In this document: piece after piece, positions 7,636 through 63,486 of the stretch
Numbering within the stretch: position 1 is the stretch's first letter
Layout: each line of letters begins with the position of its first letter
From: Macrostomum hystrix
Lineage: Eukaryota > Animalia > Platyhelminthes
DNA: 64,000 bases
Reading direction: 5' to 3'
NCBI GenBank assembly: GCA_950097015.1
Contig: CATNEN010000029.1
Location: forward strand, 3,100,001-3,164,000
Translations under genes and position numbers: made by a program
Notes under the pieces: model-generated
Seen by the model: only the letters and a program-made list of their open reading frames with translations
What the model was told of the DNA's origin: nothing
The model's database searches: none

Positions 7636-8589
7636 ACTTGTTTTTAGATATTTATTAAAGAATAATAATTTGTTAACTGTAAAAAATCTGACATTGAATT
7701 CGCAAATTGAAATAGATACTCTCGCTAATGTAGCCAAAGAACTGTTGTTATGGCAGATCATGAGCATGATCACGCAATATTTGAAGTGTTTTCATTAAGC
7801 TGTAACCAAACGAAGCATTGACTTTCTGGCCCTAATAACTAAAATAGTTAAGCAATTGGTGGACAGGTTAGGCAAACAATTCCACCTACTTGTTCTGTAA
7901 AATTCTCAACCACGGCCTAACATGAGATGCCTGGCGCCATAAGAGATTTAATCAAACAGCTAGATTAAAATAACACAATAATCAACTAGATAGTTCAGAT
8001 GACACATGTGTCCCAGTTTTTATTGTTGACATTTTCCAACTATAAAGCGTGGTTTAGAAGGCCGGGTAGATAAATTATAGCGAACTCTTGATTACAGTTT
8101 GTTGACATAAGTTGAGAATTCTTGAGCTAATACACACCACGCACACACACACACCATGCATGCATTCCAGTAGTTTACTCTCTTAGATAAAATCCGATTG
8201 GCTACAAGAGCAGACAGCCACCCCAACCTCCCGAACTCGGCACAGAGCCGCAGTTTCAGCATAAAAATAAGCCACACAGTCTTCCAAGGATGCCGTAAAG
8301 GAGAAGCGGTGGAATTTGCCAATCAGGTTTCGGAACAGCCTCTGAGCAGCCCGACCTAGTAACCTGTGGATATTGCTGAGTACAGGAAGCCAGCAGTAAT
8401 ATCATAGGTTGCTCGGTGCGGCCGCGAGGTAGAACAGCTTCAGGTGAGTTTCAAGCTGGCACATGTGCCTACAGATTCGATTTCAATGTTACCACTACTA
8501 CGACACCGCTGCGCTTCTAAAACCTGTTGAACACGTCTTGGAAGAGGCTATGAAGACTCGTTAAACAGGTGCTTGGAACGTCAGAAAAG

Positions 8590-9190
8590 CTTCGTGTCGC
8601 TAGAGACATTTGAGTTGTTAGAGAAGCGCTCCAGTCGTGAGAGAAACGTTTGAGTCGTTAGAGAAGCATTTCAATCGTTAGATCATGAAGCGTTTGAGTC
8701 GCTAGATTATGAAGCGTTTGAGTCGCTAGATCATGAAGCGTTTGAGTCGCTAGATCATGAAGCGTTTGAGTCGCTAGATCATGAAGCGTTTGAGTCATCA
8801 GATCATGAAGCGTTTGAGTCGTCAGATCATGAAGCGTTTGAGTAGTCAGATCAAGAAGAGTCGTTAGAGAAGCGTTTGAGTAGTCAGATCAAGAAGAGTC
8901 GTTAGAGAAGCGTTTGAGTAGTCAGATCAAGAAGAGTCGTTAGAGAAGCGTTTGAGTAGTCAGATCAAGAAGAGTCGTTAGAGAAGCGTTTGAGTAGTCA
9001 GATCAAGAAGAGTCGTTAGAGAAGCGTTTGAGTCGTCAGATCAAGAAGAGTCGTTAGAAAAGCGTTTGAGTCGTCTTTTGAGTCGTTGGAGAATGTTTTG
9101 GGTCGTTTTAGAATCGTTTGAGTCGTCGGAATAACGTTTGAATACTAAGAGAAACGGTTGAGTCATTAGAAAACCGTTTGAGTCGTAAAA
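8590..9190. repeat. Compound minisatellite (24-bp units grading into 38-bp units)
   Basis: GAAGCGTTTGAGTCGCTAGATCAT units are followed by GAAGCGTTTGAGTAGTCAGATCAAGAAGAGTCGTTAGA units; both ends are degenerate. Confidence 0.9.
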
Positions 9191-44315: not shown

Positions 44316-44784
44316 CAGCTAACATGTCGTTAAAACGACACCACAAGTTTATTTTGTGTTGAAAATAAATTATACAAGCCATGTTTAGTGCCTCTAAATG
44401 CAGAGAAAATTGTGTGAATTTTTTTATTTTCAAATAAAATAGGCTGAAATTTCTTCCCTAGCATATGACGTGAATTGGAAAATTGCTGTACTTTTAGTGT
44501 TATTTTTGCGTTCGTTTTTTCAGCTCAACTAGCCACGATCCTCTGACACCCTTTTCCAATCGCCATTTCGATGAGGTAGACACCGACGGGAATAATTGTG
44601 GCTTTAAATCAGGTTAAAGATTCGGCAATTAATTGGGCGTTCAAATTGTTCTCACAGTCTCTACCCATGCAGAAAATTGATTAGCCTAATTATGGGCGAT
44701 CATTTTTGGCATTTTAACGTAAATACATTTAGGATGCAAAATATTTGAAAAAAAGAGAATAAGAAGCGTACTGTGCTCTGATCA

Positions 44785-45240
44785 GCGGTCCTTCGGTATA
44801 TCGATCGACAGTTTCCATTGGTCCTTCGGTATATCGATCGACAGTTTACATTGGTCCTTCGGTATATCGATCGACAGTTTCCATTGGTCCTTCGGTATAT
44901 CGATCGACAGTTTCCATTGGTCCTTCGGTATATCAATCGACAGTTTCCATTGGTCCTTCGGCATATCAATCGACAGTTTACATTGGTCCTTCGGTATATC
45001 GATCGACAGTTTCCATTGGTCCTTCGGTATATCAATCGACAGTTTCCATTGGTCCTTCGGCATATCAATCGACAGTTTCCATTGGTCCTTCGGTATGTCT
45101 ATCGACAGTTTCCATTGGTCCTTCGGTATGTCAATCGACAGTTTACATTGGTCCTTCGGTATATCGATCGACAGTTTCCATTGGTCCTTCGGTATGTCTA
45201 TCGACAGTTTCCATTGGTCCTACGGTATGTCTATCGACAC
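44785..45240. repeat. 33-bp minisatellite
   Basis: GGTCCTTCGGTATATCGATCGACAGTTTCCATT x ~13. Confidence 0.95.
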
Positions 45241-45690
45241 ATCCTTAAGTCCTCTCTTGTGTGCAATAACTATTTTTTCGTCCTCAAGCGGTTGCGGTCC
45301 CTTCCCTCATTTGAATGTTATTGTGGTGCCGATGTCTCTGGCCGGCAGTCCACGGCCTTTGTGTTAGGCTGGTTTGTGTGGTTTTTGTTAGGCCTTCCTC
45401 ACCCACCCCCGTCCTGGCTCAGAGTGCCCGGTGCCGCCATCTGATTGGCTAGGCGCGGGCATTGTGTGTCTATCCCACCCCAGCCCTGCATGGCTTTGCC
45501 CTCACGCCAATCAGCTCTGCGTAGCTTTGCCCGTCCACCCGTCCAGCGCGTACAACCCTACCCCCCCCCAGCGCGCTGTAGGCTTTGTTTGTGCTCCGCC
45601 CCTGTCTGCCCCCTTGTCGGCCCTAGTGGTATCGTTTTCTGCCCGGGCCAAGGGTACCACTCGCCCCCCCCGCGAACTTTAAAAGATCGT

Positions 45691-45735
45691 GCCGTAAAGA
45701 CGTTCTCTTGCAGCAAAGGCTCAATTCCTTGCATG
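45691..45735 (+). other. Spliced-leader (SL)-like 45-mer relic
   Basis: GCCGTAAAGACGTTCTCTTGCAGCAAAGGCTCAATTCCTTGCATG aligns without gaps, 38/45, to the Macrostomum lignano SL as I recall it (GCCGTAAAGACGGTCTCTTACTGCGAAGACTCAATTTATTGCATG). It ends in the flatworm-typical ATG and is not followed by a GT donor. Confidence 0.7.
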
Positions 45736-45922
45736 CGAAGTGTTTATTGACTAGTGATTACCAGCGTATTGTTTATTGAAGTGCAAACATTGACGACAAG
45801 TACATTCAGCGTCATCCTGCCATCATATCGTGCGTCCCGACCGGTAAGCGCTGTATTCGTGTCTGTCCTTTCGGAGTGCCAGGCCCGCACGGAGTATTGT
45901 AATAATCTTAGAAGTACTGTGT

Positions 45923-46004
45923 GAGCGTCCTAACACCACCAGTCCCTGGCTGCAACAGAGCGTCCTAACACCACCAGTCCCTGGCTGCAACAGAGCGTCC
46001 TAAC
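45923..46004. repeat. 35-bp tandem duplication (2.3 copies)
   Basis: GAGCGTCCTAACACCACCAGTCCCTGGCTGCAACA repeated. Confidence 0.9.
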
Positions 46005-47304
46005 GCCTTGTTCAGTGATCGATCATATTTTACTTAGTAGGGCTGTGGGCCGGGGATCTCAAACCGACCACTGTCACTACATTATCAAATTCTGCAGCTG
46101 GTCGAGATTAAGTTCGGAATCTACCAGACTGTGTACTATGAATATGCTGACGGAACGCAGACAGAGGACCAAGACGGCAGCAGACAAATATCTGGTGGGC
46201 GGATTATCACAGGGGAACATGCGATCGAACAAAATATGCGAATAATTTAAAGCAGAATTTCTAGACATTTTCGAAATATTTCGAAGGCGGGCACATAAAA
46301 ACGAATTTTTTCGCACCAGCGCTGCCACCAGAAAGACTAGCCAGTCTGCGGTTACTCATTTACCCCCCTAAAAATGGCCTAAAAATAGATCCGAGAAATG
46401 CACTTTACATTTATTAGCTGAGCCAAACAGAGATATTGAAATAAAAAAACAAGTCTAAGTGTCTAATCTGTGCAAGATGCTCAGGTAACTTCAGGTAACT
46501 TAAAATCTAAGAAGATCAACTAAATGGCCTGCATAAGCGCTATCAGATTATCTGTCCATTATGTTACAAGGTGGCGCATGTGTCCCTTACTAGTACGAGT
46601 GAGAGTAGTTTTCACCTGTCCTCTGCGAACACAATTATCTAGCCAGATGTGCGCAGTGGAAACCGGTTAGCGGAAGTTCCTCCCTTGATTGGGGTGACTG
46701 GGCAACCCCCCTCCCCCGATATGGTCCAGGGCTGTACCGCTAATCAGTTCGGAGCACCTGGCTAGAGAGCACGTGACACTGCCAGCTCCACCTTTCGACA
46801 CGTCCCGTCTCATTTTCGGAATGCAGTCGAGGCAGCTCGTTATTTTCTGTCGTCATCTGCTCTCGAACTATAACTAGGATGGATCTCGCCTGAGCACAGA
46901 ATCCCTAGAGCCTAATCCCCGTTTTTCCACATTTACGCTAATCAGATAGAGAATCCCATGGAAATCAATGCAGGTAACTTCCCCTGGAAGCTAGCCCCTG
47001 GACGATAGCAAAAATCGGACGGACACATGCAGGGGCTCAGCTAAAATAGTGCAGACATTCTTCTTCTGCTTTCTTTAGAAAAAATCTGAAAATCGTTTCA
47101 AACGAGTTGGAAGTTATCTGTACTGTCACAGTGGCCAATGGTGTCGCTCTGAGCCACGCCCAGCCCTGTCCAATCCCATTTCAGCAGTTTATCGTGCCTG
47201 CAAATTCCAATCACTCGGCGTTCAGAGAGGTAGTAAAAAGTCGCAGAATATTCTTCGCTCTTGATTGCCCTCTCCGAAGTCTCCCAGCCACTGAGTCTGC
47301 GGCA

Positions 47305-48426
47305 ATGCTGGAGTCCCAGGCGGACCACGACAGGCACACGAGGAATCTGACGGGCCCAGTTGACGAGCCGCCTAGTCAGGCCTTGGCTCTGGTGTCCGGC
47401 ATTGCTATTCTGCTCTGCCTTCTGCTAGGCGCACTCGGCAACCTGTGGATTGTGGTCGTGGTGCTTTTGAGGCGAGAGATGCGCGGGAATCTCATCAACT
47501 TGTTCATAGCCAGCCTGTGCCTGAACGACCTGCTGAACCTGCTGCTCAACCAGAGCATGGTGGCCGCCTCGTACCTGGCCCACCGTTGGGTGCTGGGCCA
47601 GGTCCTGTGCGAGCTCATGCCCGAGCTCAACATGCTCCTGGTGTGCGTCTCACTTTGGCACCACGCCCTCATTAGCCTGCACCGCTACATTGTGGTGGTG
47701 CACAACAGCACCTACGTGCAGCTGCACAAGGGCCTGTACGCTGGCGTCATCCTGGCCGGCACGCGGCTGTTCGGCGCGTTGCTGAGCCTCTCCCTGCCGC
47801 TGTTCAACGCGGGCAGCTGGCAAGGCGGCAGTGTCTACCAGGCGAAGATGCTGCGCTGTATCTACGAACGCACCCAGAAGTACCGCATCCTGGGCGTCGT
47901 GCTGCTGTCCCAGCTGCTGCCCTGCGCCATCGTCATCGCCTGCTTCGGCCTCATCTTCATGTTCGTCCGGCGCAATGGCTCCGGCTCGCTGATTAGCGAC
48001 CAGCTGCTGATGCGCCGCGAGATGCGCATCACAAAGATGTTCGGCGTCGTGTTCCTCATGTTCCTCGTGGGCTTCCTGCCCTACGGCTGCCTGCGCACCG
48101 CGGACTCTGGCAGCAACCTCGGGCCGAACGCCTACGCCCTGGTGACAGTCTTGTACGCTGCCGCCTCCAGCGTCAATCCGCTGATCTTCGGCGCCATGAA
48201 TCGCGACATCCGCCTCGCCTGCCTGCGGCTCATCACCCGGTGCGGCTCGTCGGCTCCAGCAGCCGCCACCGGCGCCGCTTCAAGAACCATCGCTGCCACC
48301 GGGTTTATCAGCGAGCTGAAGAAGCAACAGCCAGGAGGCAAGGCGTCCAGCGCCTCGCTGGCCGGCTCGGACGCGGCTGACGCCGACAGCAAGAACCGAC
48401 GCAGCTCATCGTCACCAAAGCAGTGA
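47305..48426 (+). CDS. Intronless class A GPCR, Tre1/Moody/melatonin-receptor-like, 373 aa
   Basis: First in-frame ATG at 47305, with an N-terminal NLT sequon. Motifs LGNLW, NLFIASLCLND, W-x-L-G..LC, ISLHRYIVVVH (HRY), RITKMFGVVF..FLPY and VNPLIFGAMN. The ORF-track extension to 47107 does not look receptor-like. Confidence 0.88.
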   Translation: MLESQADHDRHTRNLTGPVDEPPSQALALVSGIAILLCLLLGALGNLWIVVVVLLRREMRGNLINLFIASLCLNDLLNLLLNQSMVAASYLAHRWVLGQVLCELMPELNMLLVCVSLWHHALISLHRYIVVVHNSTYVQLHKGLYAGVILAGTRLFGALLSLSLPLFNAGSWQGGSVYQAKMLRCIYERTQKYRILGVVLLSQLLPCAIVIACFGLIFMFVRRNGSGSLISDQLLMRREMRITKMFGVVFLMFLVGFLPYGCLRTADSGSNLGPNAYALVTVLYAAASSVNPLIFGAMNRDIRLACLRLITRCGSSAPAAATGAASRTIAATGFISELKKQQPGGKASSASLAGSDAADADSKNRRSSSSPKQ

Positions 48427-48989
48427 GGAAGTCGCCGTTGAAGTACGGGAGGGTCGCCAGCTGCTGTCTGTAAGCGAGCCCGACCAGAGCATCCAACAGG
48501 ACAGCTGCAGCACGCTGATGACCGACTGACTCGACAATGACAAGGAAATTGCTCTATTAGATAACAGCTGAAACCAGTGCGCTCATTTCGTCTCGCATTG
48601 TCCTCGCGCTATACTCAACTACTTAGTTAGCATATAATAGATTTGATATTTTATTTAACAGAACTGAACTGCACTGTAAGAAATTAACTGCAAACGCAAG
48701 TCACAAAGAGCTATCGTATTTGCTTTTCTCACACACATTTTTCGTATTACGAGTATCTTGTTCGCGTGTTTTTTTAGCAGCTGCTTGATGCTGCTCGATT
48801 GTTAATTATTAAAAGTACACAATTTCTGGTTTCTTTTCGAGACGAAAAACTAAAAAATATACCGTGCGACATTGCACAACACAAAAGATTAAAGTAGTCA
48901 ATGGGATTGGCTCTGCTAACAGGTACCGTGACAAAATATGCGGTATAAATGACGATACAAATGTACAGTACACCTGTTATATAGATGTA

Positions 48990-49430
48990 CAGTTACCTGT
49001 TCCAATGATATCCACACCTGTTAGACAGAGAGAGAGAGAGAGAGAGTTACCTGTCCGATGATATCCACACCTGTTAGACAGAGACAGAGAGTTACCTGTC
49101 CGATGATATCCACACCTGTTAGACAGAGAGAGAGAGAGAGTAACCTGTTCGATTATATCCACACCTGTTAGACAGAGACAGAGAGAGTAACCTGTTCGAT
49201 TATATCCACACCTGTTAGACAGAGACAGAGAGAGTAACCTGTTCGATTATATCCACACCTGTTAGACAGAGACAGAGAGAGTAACCTGTTCGATTATATC
49301 CACACCTGTTAGACAGAGAGAGAGAGTAACCTGTTCGATTATATCCACACCTGTTAGACAGAGAGAGAGAGTAACCTGTTCGATTATATCCACACCTGTT
49401 AGACAGAGAGAGAGAGAGAGAGAGAGTTCA
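48990..49430. repeat. Minisatellite of a constant ~34-bp unit separated by variable (GA)n/(GACA) linkers
   Basis: GTAACCTGTTCGATTATATCCACACCTGTTAGACA followed by (GA)n. Confidence 0.9.
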
Positions 49431-50205
49431 CACCCAGTTCTATGGGGTGTGAGGGGTAGATGCTGACCAGTTCTGTAGGGTGTGAGGGGTAGATGCTGAC
49501 CAGTTCTGAGGGGTGTGAGGGTAGATGCTGACCAGTTCTGTCGGGTGTGAGGGGTAGATGCTGACCAGTTCTGTGGGGTGTGAGGGGTAGATGCTGACCA
49601 GTTCTATGGGGTGTGAGGGGTAGATGCTGACCAGTTCTGTGGGGTGTGAGGGGTAGATGCTGACCAGTTCTATGGGGTGTGAGGGGTAGATGCTGACCAG
49701 TTCTATGGGGTGTGAGGGGTAGATGCTGACCAGTTCTGTCGGGTGTGAGGGGTAGATGCTGACCAGTTCTATGGGGTGTGAGGGGTAGATGCTGACCAGT
49801 TCTATGGGGTGTGAGGGGTAGATGCGGATCAGTTCTGTGGGATGTGAGGGGTAGATGCTGACCAGTTCTGTGGGGTGTGAGGGGTAGATGCGGATCAGTT
49901 CTGTGGGATGTGAGGGGTAGATGCTGACCAGTTCTGTGGGGTGTGAGGGGTAGATGCGGATCAGTTCTGTGGGATGTGAGGGGTAGATGCTGACCAGTTC
50001 TGTGGGGTGTGAGGGGTAGATGCTGACCAGTTCTATGGGGTGTGAGGGGTAGATGCTGACCAGTTCTATGGGGTGTGAGGGGTAGATGCTGACCAGTTCT
50101 ATGGGGTGTGAGGGGTAGATGCTGACCAGTGCTGTTGGGTGTGAGAGGTAGATGCTGACCAGTTCTGTTGGGTGTGAGAGGTAGATGCTGACCAGTTCTG
50201 TGGGA
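49431..50205. repeat. 33-bp minisatellite
   Basis: GGGGTGTGAGGGGTAGATGCTGACCAGTTCT(A/G)T x ~23. Confidence 0.95.
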
Positions 50206-50959
50206 TATGTGAGGATTTTCGCTGCGGGGCATTGAGCAGTGTTGGTCCCACGACGGACACATTTAATCATAAAAGAAGTCTTTCTAGCTCTGCTTCAGGA
50301 AGAGCAGACGAAATTAAAAAGGCAGAGTTTGGGCACTATAAAACCTTTTTTAAAATCAAACGCGAAGCCCGCCTTTGGGTTCGCTAGATTAGAAACTGAT
50401 GGAGCCTGTTCAAATCAAAGGAGCTCCTACTGGGAATTGAAAATCCACAAACAAAATCTATGCACAAACGGAGTAGGGATTACTGATGTCTCAACGCGTT
50501 AATCAGCATTCTCTGAGCGAGTTTGATTACTTTCGCTGACTGACTGACTGACTGACTGACTGAGCGATAGAAACGCAAGTGGTGTGTGAGAACTGCACTT
50601 GGGGTTGCACATATGTTAGGCAGATGCCGCACATGTTTCAGTAGCCAAATGTAGGGCCCGATAGTTAAATTAAAGCCAACACAGCCTAGTCAGAGACTAA
50701 GCCAGACTAATAAATATAGTTTTTAGACAGTCTATGCCTCGGTCTGCTTCAAGTACAGTGCATGCGCCCAATCGCTGATCAAATTAATCTTCCAGTCTCA
50801 CCTACCGCGTCATGAGAAATGAGCTGTGAAGGCGCCCCCTTCTTACTAAATTAATAGATGTAGGGGACCAAGGAGACTGCTGCAGAACCAGTTGATCAGA
50901 GACAGATAGAGAGAACAGAGGGCCGGACACGCACAGTAGACAGAAGGACAAAACAGACA

Positions 50960-50986
50960 GGCAGGCAGGTAGGCAGGCAGACAGGC

Positions 50987-51031
<45 letters not shown>

Positions 51032-52505
51032 CCCAGCACAGACAGACAGACAGCCAGCACAGACAGACAGACACCCAGCACAGACAGACAGACAGACACC
51101 CAGCACAGACAGACAGACACCCAGCACAGACAGACAGACACCCAGCACAGACAGACAGACACCCAGCACAGACAGACAGACACCAGCACAGACAGACAGA
51201 CACCCAGCACAGACAGACAGACACCCAGCACAGACAGACAGACACCCAGCACAGACAGACAGACAGACACCCAGCACAGACAGACAGACACCCAGCACAG
51301 ACAGACAGACACCCAGCACAGACAGACAGACACCCAGCACAGACAGACAGACAGACACCCAGCACAGACAGACAGACACCCAGCACAGACAGACAGACAG
51401 ACACCCAGCACAGACAGACAGACACCCAGCACAGACAGACAGACAGACACCCAGCACAGACAGACAGACACCCAGCACAGACAGACAGACACCCAGCACA
51501 GACAGACAGACACCCAGCACAGACAGACAGACACCCAGCACAGACAGACAGACAGACACCCAGCACAGACAGACAGACACCCAGCACAGACAGACAGACA
51601 CCCAGCACAGACAGACAGACACCCAGCACAGACAGACAGACACCCAGCACAGACAGACAGACACCCAGCACAGACAGACAGACAGACACCCAGCACAGAC
51701 AGACAGACACCCAGCACAGACAGACAGACAGACACCCAGCACAGACAGACAGACACCCAGCACAGACAGACAGACACCCAGCACAGACAGACAGACACCC
51801 TGCACAGACAGACAGAAAGACACCCAGCACAGACAGACAGACAGACACCCAGCACAGACAGACAGAAAGACACCCAGCACAGACAGACAGACAGACACCC
51901 AGCACAGACAGACAGACAGACACCCAGCACAGACAGACAGACACCCAGCACAGACAGACAGACACCCAGCACAGACAGACAGACACCCAGCACAGACAGA
52001 CAGACACCCAGCACAGACAGACAGACACCCAGCACAGACAGACAGACACCCAGCACAGACAGACAGACACCCAGCACAGACAGACAGACACCCAGCACAG
52101 ACAGACAGACACCCAGCACAGACAGACAGACACCCAGCACAGACAGACAGACACCCAGCACAGACAGACAGACACCCAGCACAGACAGACAGACACCCAG
52201 CACAGACAGACAGACACCCAGCACAGACAGACAGACACCCAGCACAGACAGACAGACACCCAGCACAGACAGACAGACACCCAGCACAGACAGACAGACA
52301 CCCAGCACAGACAGACAGACAGACACCCAGCACAGACAGACAGACACCCAGCACAGACAGACAGACAGACACCCAGCACAGACAGACAGACACCCAGCAC
52401 AGACAGACAGACAGACACCCAGCACAGACAGACAGACACCCAGCACAGACAGACAGACAGACACCCAGCACAGACAGACAGACACCCAGCATAGACAGAC
52501 AGTCA
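50960..52505. repeat. (GACA)n/ACCCAGCAC compound satellite, locus 2
   Basis: 20/24-bp units ACCCAGCACAGACAGACAGAC(AGAC); source of the 545-557 aa spurious ORFs. Confidence 0.95.
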
Positions 52506-52919
52506 GGCAGACAGAAACAAAGGATGCGAACATGCGACAGGAAGGGCTAGGCAAGGCCTTATTTTCCAAGGCATACCAGAGTCACTATAGGCTCAACTAG
52601 TGGCATGACAATTAGCGAATGCTATTGTTAGAAGCGAGGTTTATCGGGCAAGGTCGTGTTAATGTTAGAAATAGAAACTGCTGACCGCTCGTCTAGCCAG
52701 TGTCTGTCAATTTTTTCTGTTGCCGTGTTTGAGATCACCCATGCGAATGGCATAGACACACATGCCCACACTGGACAGAACATAAAAGAAGCATGAGGCC
52801 AGATAAGCTACTTTTACTCGTATATCTGAAAACGTGCTAAATTAAAGATTTTGACAGATAATGTACTTGCAAGATTTCTCGTTTTCTCGGCTACTAAAAG
52901 GTAAACAATATCACACAGA

Positions 52920-53690
52920 TTGAATACAGTATACAGTAGAATACAGTAGATTACATATTGAATACAGTAGATTACATATTGAATAAAGTAGACTATAGAT
53001 TTAATACAGTAGATTACAGAGTGAATACAGTAGATTACAGATTGAATACAGTAGATTACAGATTGAATACAGTAGACTACAGATTGAATACAGTAGATTA
53101 CAGATTGAATACAGTAGATTACAGATTTAATACAGTAGACTACAGTTTGAATTCAGTAGATTACAGATAGAATACAGTAGATTACAGATTGAATTCAGTA
53201 GATAACAGATTGAATACAGTAGATTACAGATTGAATACAGTAGATTACAGATAGAATACAGTAGATTACAGATTGAATTCAGTAGATAACAGATTGAATA
53301 CAGTAGATTACAGATTGAATACTGTAGATTACAGATTGAATACAGTAGATTACAGATTGAATACAGTAGATTACAGATTGAATACAGTAGATTACAGATT
53401 GAATACAGTAGATTACAGATTGAATACAGTAGACTACAGATTGAATACAGTAGATTACAGATTGAATACAGTAGATTACAGATAGAATACAGTAGATTAC
53501 AGATTGAATTCAGTAGATAACAGATTGAATACAGTAGATTACAGATAGAATACAGTAGATTACAGATTGAATTCAGTAGATAACAGATTGAATACAGTAG
53601 ATTACAGATTGAATACAGTAGATTACAGATGGAATACAGTAGATTACAGATTGAATACAGTAGATTACAGATGGAATACAGTAGATTACA
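52920..53690. repeat. 21-bp AT-rich minisatellite (GATTGAATACAGTAGATTACA)
   Basis: About 36 units. Confidence 0.95.
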
Positions 53691-54123
53691 AAAAGTTTAA
53701 CATTTAAAGAAAAGCAACAGAATTTTTACGAATCGTATCAATTTTCAATTGTAGAGTTTTTAACATTAATTATAATAATTAAACACATCAAAATACGAGG
53801 TCCTTTTACTCAATTGCAAACGATTTAATCTGTCCTTCATTTTTTAACAATTTAAGAATGAATCATGAATGAATGCTGCTATTTTTTATTGCCGGAATAC
53901 TCATACGTGGTACATTGCACAAATTGATAAATTGAACTTAATAAATATTATATTTTATAATAATTTTATATTCACACGCAAATAAAAATACGCGTAGAAC
54001 ACGAAAAACATGGTGGGAAAGAAAGTCGAGGACAGAGATGAGCAGTTCGACTTAACAAATTACAGTGCTATAGCATAACAGCTGTGCGAAAAACAGACTG
54101 CTTAACTTTTTTTAACGCTGATT

Positions 54124-61750: not shown

Positions 61751-61854
61751 TCTAAATACTAGAACGATTTAAATCTAATTGTTCAGGATTTAAACTTTAC
61801 CAAGATTACCAAATCTGTCAAATTCCTGTCTTAGGTAGGCAAGATTAGAGAGGC

Positions 61855-62200
61855 TGCCCAATCAGAATTGTATAGGTTTGGAGTGGTTGACCAATCAGAG
61901 GTGAATAGGGTTAAGGATAGCTGGCCAATCAGAGGTGAATATGGTTGGGATGGCTGGCCAATTAGAGTTGAAGCGGGTAGGGATGGCTGGCCAATCATAG
62001 GTGGGTAGGGTTGGTATGGATGGCCAATCAGAGGTTGGGTAGGGTAGGGATGACTGGCCAATTAGATGTGAATAGGGTTGGGTTGGCTGGCCAATTAGAT
62101 GTGAATAGGGTTGGGATGGCTGGCCAATTAGATGTGAATAGGATTGGTTTGGCTGGCCAATTAGATGTGAATAGGGTTGGGTTGGCTGGCCAATTTGAGT
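61855..62200. repeat. 33-bp minisatellite whose invariant core is CCAAT
   Basis: CCAAT at 61858, 61891, 61925, 61958, 61991, 62024, 62058, 62091, 62124, 62157 and 62190. Confidence 0.9.
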
Positions 62201-63486
62201 TTGATGCCCAAGATTAGTCTGCAGTCTGTTCAGCTATTAAAGGCTAATTAAGAAAGCCGCAGGATAGCAAAAACATGGGCTAATTGAATCTGTAGAGTAA
62301 TTAAGGCAGAAGGAGAAGGTGATTTCGTCTACTCATTGCTTGCTTAACAACACTGATTCATTATTCACACATTTACAAAAGGCACTCAAGCTAATACAGC
62401 AGGGAATTCGTTCGTGTATGCCTCCTTTACGACAAACTTGTAATTAGAGTTAATAATGCATACTATTAAGCAGAAGCAACACAAGTGTCCATGGTAACTA
62501 CGGAGCACTTTTAAATGCATTATATGTATTATGATTTAATATTTCCGCTTCTAAAAAGACAGCCGAAAAGTAGCACAGAATTAATTAAAAAGCACTGTGA
62601 AATGCTTATGTAAACGCACACAGAAATGCACACAAAACCGGTTACAAAAAATTGCGTGAGGAAGGATAAAAGTACAAGGAGCATTACTTTTTATAAAAAA
62701 TTCGACAATTAACAAATCAATTTAGGAAATAAGAAAGTTTATTTCGCAGTTTCTTCAGAGTTTAAGTTTTTTCTGAGAGAATTAATCTGACAAAAACATA
62801 TTTAGCTACAAAAACTGATTTCTATTACTTGCAATAGTACTTTTGAGGCATTTGGATGCATTTGAAAAATACTAGAAATTGTTGTCTAAGCTACTTACTA
62901 GTGAGTAGCTCGAATTAGCGATTGGATGTTCTGAACAATGAATATAAATTCTTAAAAAAGGCTATGCAGTAAAAATTCACAGTTTATTTACCGCCATATT
63001 CGTTTATTTCTTTCTCGCCATCGTTCTAGCTTTGTGTTTTTGTTGTCAGTTGCTGATATACAAATTACATTGAGCCGCCAGTTAAAAAAGTTAACCTGGC
63101 TTTGCTGCTTGTGCAGGCAGTCCTTTCACTCTATTAGCACCTTAAATTTATAATGTGGGCTTGCCTTTTTTCGATCACAATATTTATCTCTTTTTGTCTT
63201 ATTTGTTCCCATGCACGGATCCAAGTGGTGGAAAGTACTCTTAGTGTATGCCTGAGCGAGTGTTTCGTTTGCCTGCTTGTCCGACTGTTTGAAGCGTCTG
63301 GCTCACGCGATCCTAATGGACATTGCTTACTTTAACTAATTAGTCACATTGTATATTTTAACTAAAAGTCTGTCTATCCAAGAACTATCCCGCCTATGTA
63401 CGAGTATGTGCTACATTGTGTAAGTCAGTTGTTGTTTGCTAAAAGATACACTCGCTATCGGTTCTGTCGTCGTTTATTTTACTCAC

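What the first reader, a model, noticed from the sequence alone, without database searches (positions are those of the whole stretch)
45380..45850. Genomic spliced-leader relic between a CCAAT/GC-rich region and a splice donor, upstream of an intronless GPCR
Seen: 45691-45735 is a gap-free 38/45 match to the Macrostomum SL as recalled, ending in TTGCATG. It lacks the GT donor and Sm site an SL-RNA gene would need. It is preceded by ~300 bp of GC-rich DNA with opposed CCAAT boxes (45444, 45507) and followed 108 nt later by CCG|GTAAGC (45844). The next gene is an intronless GPCR (ATG 47305). Established: flatworm SLs end in AUG, and SL relics in dinoflagellate genomes mark retroposed trans-spliced mRNAs. 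Inference: this is either a retrocopied trans-spliced mRNA or SL-headed element, or a cis-encoded SL-like first exon that gives the GPCR mRNA an SL-like 5' end without trans-splicing.
Basis: partly seen in the sequence, partly recalled or inferred. Interest (0 to 1): 0.8.

Follow-up and report, generated by a model that had tools for sequence, protein, structure and literature searches.

The report
Spliced-leader relic inside a solo LTR
The spliced-leader-like 45-mer is real, but it sits inside a lone long terminal repeat left by a Gypsy-type jumping gene whose whole family carries a copy of the worm's spliced leader, and nothing links it to the neighbouring receptor gene.

Summary
Window 45691-45735 matches the genome's own 45-nt spliced leader (SL) exon at 38/45.

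The whole 45380-45850 stretch lies inside a 760-bp solo LTR (45322-46081, TG...CA ends, 4-bp target duplication TTAT). It belongs to a Ty3/Gypsy retrotransposon family with at least 27 LTR copies in this genome, whose size and contig count match the published Macrostomum hystrix assembly. Full elements have a primer-binding site (PBS), gag, PR-RT-RNaseH-IN pol, a polypurine tract (PPT) and LTR pairs 99.3-100% identical.

Most family copies carry the SL with only 2-3 mismatches. A sister LTR family has it at the same spot. Similarity to the true SL RNA gene covers the SL exon only, not promoter or intron. This points to capture from a trans-spliced RNA during reverse transcription, which is inferred rather than shown.

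Public-run contigs cover the GPCR from 47274 to 48631. They show no junction from 45843.

The scan found this phenomenon before on another piece of this genome (s1-306094). A 2025 paper notes SL fragments in LTR/LINE elements of parasitic flatworms. This is a new member of a known kind, of modest interest.

The parts
45318..45321 (.). Left copy of the 4-bp target-site duplication (TTAT)
   Evidence: the flank ...aatgTTAT is followed by TGTGGTGCC. The same 4 bases follow the LTR end.
45322..46081 (+). Solo LTR (760 bp) of a Ty3/Gypsy retrotransposon family, with TG...CA termini and no internal region attached
   Evidence: at least 27 homologous copies at 78-96% identity; boundaries and target duplications in this copy and in about 10 others; the same unit flanks gag-pol in L033.
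45322..45690 (+). Presumed U3 (promoter part of the LTR), G+C-rich. It holds ATTGG at 45444-45448 and CCAAT at 45507-45511.
   Evidence: The block around the CCAAT box is the best conserved part between the two LTR families (0.95). The U3 assignment is inferred.
45678..45685 (+). TATA-like TTTAAAAG, 6-13 nt upstream of the SL relic
   Evidence: GCGAACTTTAA(A)AGAT is conserved in family A and in sister family B. A promoter role is inferred.
45691..45735 (+). Spliced-leader relic, 38/45 identical to the genome's true SL exon. It keeps the terminal ATG.
45736..45843 (+). LTR sequence after the SL (presumed rest of R and start of U5). The ATTAAA found at +41 in most family copies is mutated here.
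   Evidence: ATTAAA at +41 in 16 of 17 main-family copies and absent in L001-L004.
45844..45849 (+). GTAAGC splice-donor-like motif
   Evidence: GGTAAG lies at +108/109 after the SL in 20 of 21 family A copies and at +123 in one (L003). It lies at +38 to +46 in 5 of 11 family B copies. Use as a donor was not shown.
45923..46007 (+). About 35-bp tandem repeat (about 2.4 units) inside the LTR. It is expanded to many units in copy L003.
46082..46085 (.). Right copy of the target-site duplication (TTAT)
47305..48426 (+). Neighbouring intronless rhodopsin-family GPCR ORF (373 aa). It is context, not part of the element.
   Evidence: Contigs at 100% identity cover 47274-48631.

Best explanation
Shown: the finding lies within a solo LTR (45322-46081) of a Ty3/Gypsy LTR retrotransposon family of Macrostomum hystrix. 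Every LTR of this family, and of a sister family, carries a DNA copy of the host's 45-nt spliced-leader exon. It sits just downstream of a conserved TATA-like box, which is where U3 should meet R. The window copy is an older, decayed member. It has 7 mismatches against 2-3 in most copies, it has lost its internal part, and it is flanked by its TTAT target duplication.

Inferred: an ancestral element RNA was SL trans-spliced near its 5' end. Minus-strand strong-stop DNA copied the SL, and strand transfer fixed it between U3 and the rest of R in both LTRs, removing the acceptor site. Since then the SL has been inherited as part of the LTR leader.

The GTAAGC 108 nt downstream is a conserved LTR feature, possibly the element's own splice donor. 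It was not made for the GPCR, which lies 1.2 kb downstream and is most likely expressed independently.
For: - Repeat family: 29 genomic matches to 45640-45860 and 59 to the whole LTR.
- Element anatomy: pairs 7.2-8.4 kb apart flank a gag ORF with a zinc knuckle and a pol ORF with PR-RT-RNaseH-IN. A PBS beginning TGG lies 3 nt after the 5' LTR and a polypurine tract precedes the 3' LTR.
- Insertion hallmarks: matching 4-bp target duplications at about 10 solo LTRs and 3 distinct full elements. LTR pairs are 99.3-100% identical.
- Window copy: TG...CA ends, TTAT on both sides, no PBS.
- True SL RNA genes: exact SL, then GTAAGAC, an Sm-like site and a hairpin, in 11.6-kb tandem units.
- Extent of similarity: a comparison of 600 nt upstream to 500 nt downstream of the SL gene with the LTRs matches only the SL exon.
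- Sister family B carries the SL at the same place, with different mismatches and different downstream sequence.
- Literature: SL fragments in LTR and LINE elements of parasitic flatworms are explained the same way in PMC12582326.
Against: - The transcription start, the poly(A) site and therefore the R borders were not measured. Only contigs were available, and they cannot show RNA ends.
- The TATA-like box lies only 6-13 nt upstream of the SL, so transcripts may start inside the SL segment.
- No SL-less relative of the LTR was found to show the state before capture.
- The capture mechanism needs extension from a mismatched strong-stop end, which is rare and was not demonstrated here.
Confidence: 0.85

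Rival explanations
1. The solo LTR acts as an alternative promoter. Its SL-like first exon (about 45691-45843) is cis-spliced from the GTAAGC donor to an acceptor just upstream of the GPCR start. This would give the GPCR mRNA an SL-like 5' end without trans-splicing.
For: - The LTR has the same orientation as the GPCR and ends 1.2 kb upstream of it. The donor motif is conserved.
- The window subfamily has lost the ATTAAA at +41 that would otherwise end LTR transcripts before the donor.
- A pyrimidine-rich tract ending in AG lies at 47250-47279.
- Precedent: Echinococcus solo LTRs splice into former trans-splice acceptors of downstream genes (PMC4558846).
Against: - No joint from 45843 appears in two runs whose contigs cover the GPCR at 100% identity. 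Coverage starts at 47274 and 47283 and is absent from 46140-47211.
- All LTR-matching contigs are 90-95% identical, so they come from other copies, not this one.
- The GPCR has its own CCAAT-bearing upstream region.
Confidence: 0.07
2. The SL segment is kept by selection as a working part of the LTR leader rather than being a neutral scar. It might mimic the 5' end of trans-spliced host mRNAs for translation or stability, or serve as the start of R for strand transfer.
For: - Between families A and B the SL bin is 0.80 identical, against 0.58-0.64 for the 90 nt upstream.
- Both the main family and the sister family end the SL in ATA instead of ATG, which removes an upstream start codon from the leader.
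- Young, apparently intact elements all retain the SL.
Against: - Higher identity could also come from independent or repeated capture from the same invariant host SL.
- A pol II LTR transcript would lack the trimethylguanosine cap that comes with a true SL.
- Flank identity is lowered by indels.
- Within family A the SL bin (0.96) is no better conserved than most other bins (0.91-0.99).
Confidence: 0.15
3. The locus is a processed retrocopy of a host trans-spliced mRNA, or an SL RNA pseudogene that happened to land here.
For: SL relics of that kind are known from dinoflagellates (cited in PMC12582326). Exact SL copies followed by non-intron sequence exist elsewhere in this genome (L022-L024).
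Against: - The sequence upstream of the SL is conserved across all copies.
- There is no poly(A) tail.
- The target duplication brackets the 760-bp TG...CA unit, not an SL-to-tail unit.
- No SL RNA intron, donor or Sm site follows the SL.
Confidence: 0.02

Closest known systems
SL fragments in LTR and LINE elements of parasitic flatworms (597 loci discarded in the SL-RNA survey of PMC12582326)
   Same: Partial or whole leader sequence inside mobile elements with no other SL RNA feature. [quoted passage not shown]
   Different: That paper gives one passing remark without anatomy. Here the host is a free-living macrostomid. The SL is complete (45 nt) and sits at a fixed place next to a TATA-like box in two related Gypsy LTR families. 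The window copy is a solo LTR.
SL relics in retroposed genes of dinoflagellates (Slamovits and Keeling 2008, as cited in PMC12582326)
   Same: A genomic DNA copy of a spliced leader that records reverse transcription of a trans-spliced RNA.
   Different: Those are retrocopies of host mRNAs, often with stacked truncated SLs. This one is a heritable part of an autonomous LTR retrotransposon's terminal repeat.
ta-TRIM solo-LTR fusions in Echinococcus multilocularis (PMC4558846)
   Same: A flatworm solo LTR lies upstream of a host gene in the same orientation and carries a splice-donor motif. This is a model for how it could feed a downstream gene.
   Different: In Echinococcus the fusions were shown by RT-PCR and the LTR carries no SL. 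Here no fusion transcript was seen.
SL-gene-targeting non-LTR retrotransposons (SLACS/CZAR of trypanosomatids, NeSL-1 of nematodes; from my own knowledge)
   Same: An association between retroelements and spliced-leader sequence.
   Different: Those elements insert into SL RNA genes. Here the SL sequence sits inside the element and the true SL genes are elsewhere and intact.

Membership tests
SL RNA gene | SL exon sequence at the 5' end | tested here: met
   38/45 to the genome's own SL exon. It is diverged at 7 positions.
SL RNA gene | GT splice donor immediately after the SL | tested here: not met
   True genes read ATG|GTAAGAC. The window reads ATG|CGAAGT.
SL RNA gene | Sm-binding site and downstream hairpins (about 100-nt RNA) | tested here: not met
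   No similarity to the SL RNA intron. No Rfam match. No RAU(n)GR-like motif was seen on reading 45736-45850.
Solo LTR of a Ty3/Gypsy LTR retrotransposon | TG...CA termini and a short target-site duplication | tested here: met
   TGTGG...ACTACA flanked by TTAT on each side. Other copies have their own 4-bp duplications.
Solo LTR of a Ty3/Gypsy LTR retrotransposon | Homologous copies occur as direct pairs around PBS, gag, pol and PPT | tested here: met
   L033 has LTRs at 1328-2017 and 8489-9177, a PBS beginning TGGCGCCCGAAC, and a PPT AGGAGGGGAGGA. Other pairs are shown.
Solo LTR of a Ty3/Gypsy LTR retrotransposon | pol domain order PR-RT-RNaseH-IN | tested here: met
   Pfam on the 1471-aa ORF: Asp_protease 205-295, RVT_1 551-712, RT_RNaseH 807-908, Integrase_H2C2 and rve 1036-1205.
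Solo LTR of a Ty3/Gypsy LTR retrotransposon | No internal region attached in this copy | tested here: met
   No PBS after 46081, and no second LTR copy in the window.
Processed retrocopy of a trans-spliced host mRNA | The copy starts at the SL, has unrelated upstream DNA, and carries a poly(A) tail with a flanking duplication | tested here: not met
   Upstream sequence is conserved among copies. There is no A-tail. The duplication brackets the LTR.
LTR-derived alternative first exon of a host gene | Transcripts that join the LTR donor to the gene | tested here: inconclusive
   No such joint in the contigs of runs X1 and X2. Contigs cannot show absence, and the kind of run is not on record.

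The most novel reading that the evidence does not exclude
The embedded spliced leader is a maintained, working module of these LTRs. It would give retrotransposon RNAs, and host genes captured by solo LTRs such as the GPCR here, a genome-encoded 5' end that imitates trans-spliced mRNAs.
Probability: 0.1. Interest if true: 0.65.

Novelty: new member of a known kind. Interest (0 to 1): 0.3.

Why it matters
The result matters in three ways.

- Annotation. SL-like matches in Macrostomum genomes are mostly not SL RNA genes or gene 5' ends. Within 3 mismatches of the 35-mer there are 149 matches. The main groups are two tandem SL RNA gene arrays and this LTR family. SL-read mapping and SL-gene searches should mask these LTRs.

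- Biology. The precise exon-only boundaries are a clean record that retrotransposon RNAs are substrates of SL trans-splicing, and that reverse transcription can fix the leader in an LTR.

- Possible follow-up. If the SL segment proved functional, it would be a case of a mobile element imitating a host mRNA mark. The present data do not show that.

Tried and rejected
- SL RNA gene or pseudogene: rejected. There is no donor, no Sm site and no intron similarity.
- Host-mRNA retrocopy: rejected by the LTR anatomy.
- Search for an SL-less relative of the LTR (the state before capture): every related LTR fetched (L037-L047) has the SL. L056 is only a copy truncated before the SL. The divergent contig end seen in run X1 maps to a family B copy that also has the SL.
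- tRNA matching the PBS: two exact genomic matches to the PBS complement (L052, L054) hold no tRNA by ARAGORN. The primer tRNA stays unidentified. The resemblance to a tRNA-Lys PBS comes from my memory only.
- RNA evidence: only two runs of unrecorded kind, held as contigs, were available. They cannot show transcript starts, ends or rare junctions.
- Other paired SL matches: the pairs 4.2 kb apart on C1 and 3.6 kb apart on C7 were checked as possible further SL-bearing LTR pairs. The first is a 4155-bp tandem duplication. The second shares only 245 bp. Neither was resolved.

Full report
**Observation**

- The 45-mer lies at 45691-45735.
- Opposed CCAAT motifs lie at 45444-45448 and 45507-45511.
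- CCG|GTAAGC has its GT at 45844, 108 nt after the 45-mer.
- G+C is 0.64 across 45400-45699.

The 45-mer is unique in the window and is not expected by chance. The published M. lignano 35-nt SL (PMC8629364) matches 45701-45735 at 28/35. The genome holds 23 exact copies of that 35-mer. The tandem copies on contigs C15, C17 and C42 are true SL RNA genes. They have a 45-nt exon, then GTAAGAC, an Sm-like ATATTTTTAG and a terminal hairpin. The downstream ORF 47305-48426 is a rhodopsin-family receptor. The assembly size and contig number (220,453,370 bases, 42 contigs) equal those of the published Macrostomum hystrix assembly (PMC10468722).

**What it is**

The stretch is not unique. 45640-45860 has 29 matches in the genome at 82-98% identity besides itself. 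The whole unit has at least 27 near-full-length relatives. Copies occur in direct pairs 7.2-8.4 kb apart. One such pair was read in full as locus L033.
- A 690-bp repeat lies at each end, and the two are 99.3% identical.
- Both have TG...CA termini and a GAAT target duplication.
- A primer-binding site beginning TGGCGCCCGAAC lies 3 nt after the 5' repeat.
- A 302-aa ORF carries a CCHC zinc knuckle.
- A 1471-aa ORF carries protease, reverse transcriptase, RNase H and integrase, in that order.
- A polypurine tract lies directly before the 3' repeat.

This is a Ty3/Gypsy LTR retrotransposon. Other full copies have LTR pairs 99.7-100% identical, so the family has been active recently. Many other copies are solo LTRs, each with its own 4-bp target duplication.

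The window copy runs from 45322 to 46081 (760 bp). It begins TGTGG and ends ACTACA. It is flanked by TTAT on both sides and has no PBS after it. It is therefore a solo LTR. Its nearest relative (C1:26379076-26379824, also solo) is 95.5% identical, and the main family is about 88% identical. The 'splice donor' is a conserved LTR motif. GGTAAG lies at +108/109 after the SL in 20 of 21 family copies examined and at +123 in one, L003.

**The SL inside the LTR**

Most family copies carry the SL with only 2-3 mismatches to the true 45-mer. The window copy, with 7, is simply more decayed. A sister LTR family (L037-L047, about 75% identical in U3) has the SL at the same position, behind the same conserved GCGAACTTTAA(A)AGAT box. 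It has 4-10 mismatches at partly different positions, and a different, shorter sequence follows the SL.

I compared 600 nt upstream to 500 nt downstream of a true SL RNA gene with the LTRs. The only match is the SL exon itself (plus one upstream T), with nothing from promoter or intron. An exon-only copy is what a spliced product looks like. The SL therefore most likely entered through an RNA that had been trans-spliced, not through DNA of an SL gene. The 108 nt after the SL occur only in LTR copies. The simplest source is thus the element's own trans-spliced RNA rather than a captured host mRNA.

**Proposed mechanism (inferred)**

- A genomic RNA trans-spliced near its 5' end is copied into minus-strand strong-stop DNA ending in the SL complement.
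- After transfer to the 3' R, extension places the SL between U3 and the remaining R.
- Plus-strand transfer then copies it into both LTRs.
- The acceptor site is lost in the process, so the SL becomes a stable part of the leader.

Two signals fit the SL lying at or near the start of R. A poly(A)-like ATTAAA lies at +41 in the main family, and AATAAA lies at +3 or +9 in the sister family. However, R borders were not measured. The TATA-like box is only 6-13 nt upstream, so transcription may start within the SL segment.

**Is the SL segment functional?**

Between the two families the SL bin is 0.80 identical, against 0.58-0.64 for the 90 nt upstream and 0.95 for the CCAAT block. Both the main family and the sister family end the SL in ATA rather than ATG, which removes an upstream start codon. 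This hints at constraint. It is equally explained by separate decay from the same invariant host sequence, or by repeated capture. Within the main family the SL bin (0.96) is no better conserved than most other bins (0.91-0.99). I rate function as possible but unproven.

**Link to the GPCR**

The LTR ends 1224 bp upstream of the GPCR start, in the same orientation. The window subfamily has lost the ATTAAA that would end LTR transcripts before the donor. A fusion like those of Echinococcus ta-TRIM solo LTRs (PMC4558846) is therefore conceivable.

The only public runs found (X1 and X2, kind not on record, held as contigs) gave the following.
- They cover the GPCR at 100% identity from 47274 or 47283 to 48631.
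- They cover nothing in 46140-47211.
- They show no joint from 45843.
- They match the LTR only at 90-95% identity, so those contigs come from other copies.

The coverage pattern looks like mRNA, but that is my inference. Contigs show presence, not absence. The GPCR link is therefore unsupported rather than excluded.

**Comparison with what is known**

A 2025 survey of parasitic flatworms discarded 597 SL-like loci lying in LTR and LINE elements and proposed the same origin in one sentence (PMC12582326). PMC8629364 reports a genomic SL copy in M. lignano that maps to the 5' end of a trans-spliced protein-coding gene and was once mistaken for the SL RNA gene. The scan itself reported the same phenomenon on another piece of this genome (s1-306094). 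I reached the LTR reading before that look-up and checked its literature lead myself.

The present locus is therefore a further, decayed member of a known kind. Three things are added here: the exon-only boundary test, the solo-LTR anatomy of this copy, and the sister family with the SL at the same place.

**Limits**

No raw reads were available, so there is no transcription start, poly(A) site or splice evidence. No other Macrostomum genome could be searched with these tools.

Noticed in passing
L048 (G000:C39:12667700-12668900); array at about C39:12667884-12685526 and beyond: A 927-bp tandem array of at least 20 units holds a second SL RNA gene variant. Its exon ends ...GACTCTCTTTTTTGCATG, followed by GTAAGAC, an Sm-like GTATTTTTGA and a hairpin. 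It may be a second spliced-leader type in this species.
   Followed up: partly
L025-L032 (G000:C15, C17, C42): The canonical SL RNA genes sit in tandem units about 11.6 kb long. What else those units carry was not examined.
   Followed up: no
L021 (G000:C1:16047913): A dispersed SL RNA gene copy has an intact intron, Sm-like site and hairpin, but its first 10 nt differ (tCatcAAAGA) and its upstream region is different. It is either a variant or a pseudogene.
   Followed up: no
L023 (G000:C7:8561392) and L058 (G000:C7:5516340 and 5519956): Another repeat has an embedded SL, exact in L023. Both the upstream sequence (...ctcgtttgaggtttg) and the downstream sequence (cttcaactcgcttcgcttcg...) are shared between copies. 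This suggests a further SL-bearing element family.
   Followed up: partly
L057 (G000:C1:19307000-19315000): A 4155-bp tandem duplication (99.6% identical) contains 508-bp internal repeats and an SL copy with 4 mismatches followed by unrelated sequence.
   Followed up: partly
window 44688-45338: A 33-bp minisatellite (about 19 units) runs up to the 5' edge of the solo LTR.
   Followed up: no
window 49387-50346 and 50870-53700: Long minisatellites with extreme strand composition: a 33-bp unit with GC skew up to +0.58, and 21-bp units with AT skew of 1.0, meaning no T on the + strand over more than 600 nt.
   Followed up: no
window 61848-62227: A 33-bp tandem repeat in which each unit carries GGCCAAT(C/T)AGA, giving a dense array of CCAAT-box-like motifs.
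   Followed up: no
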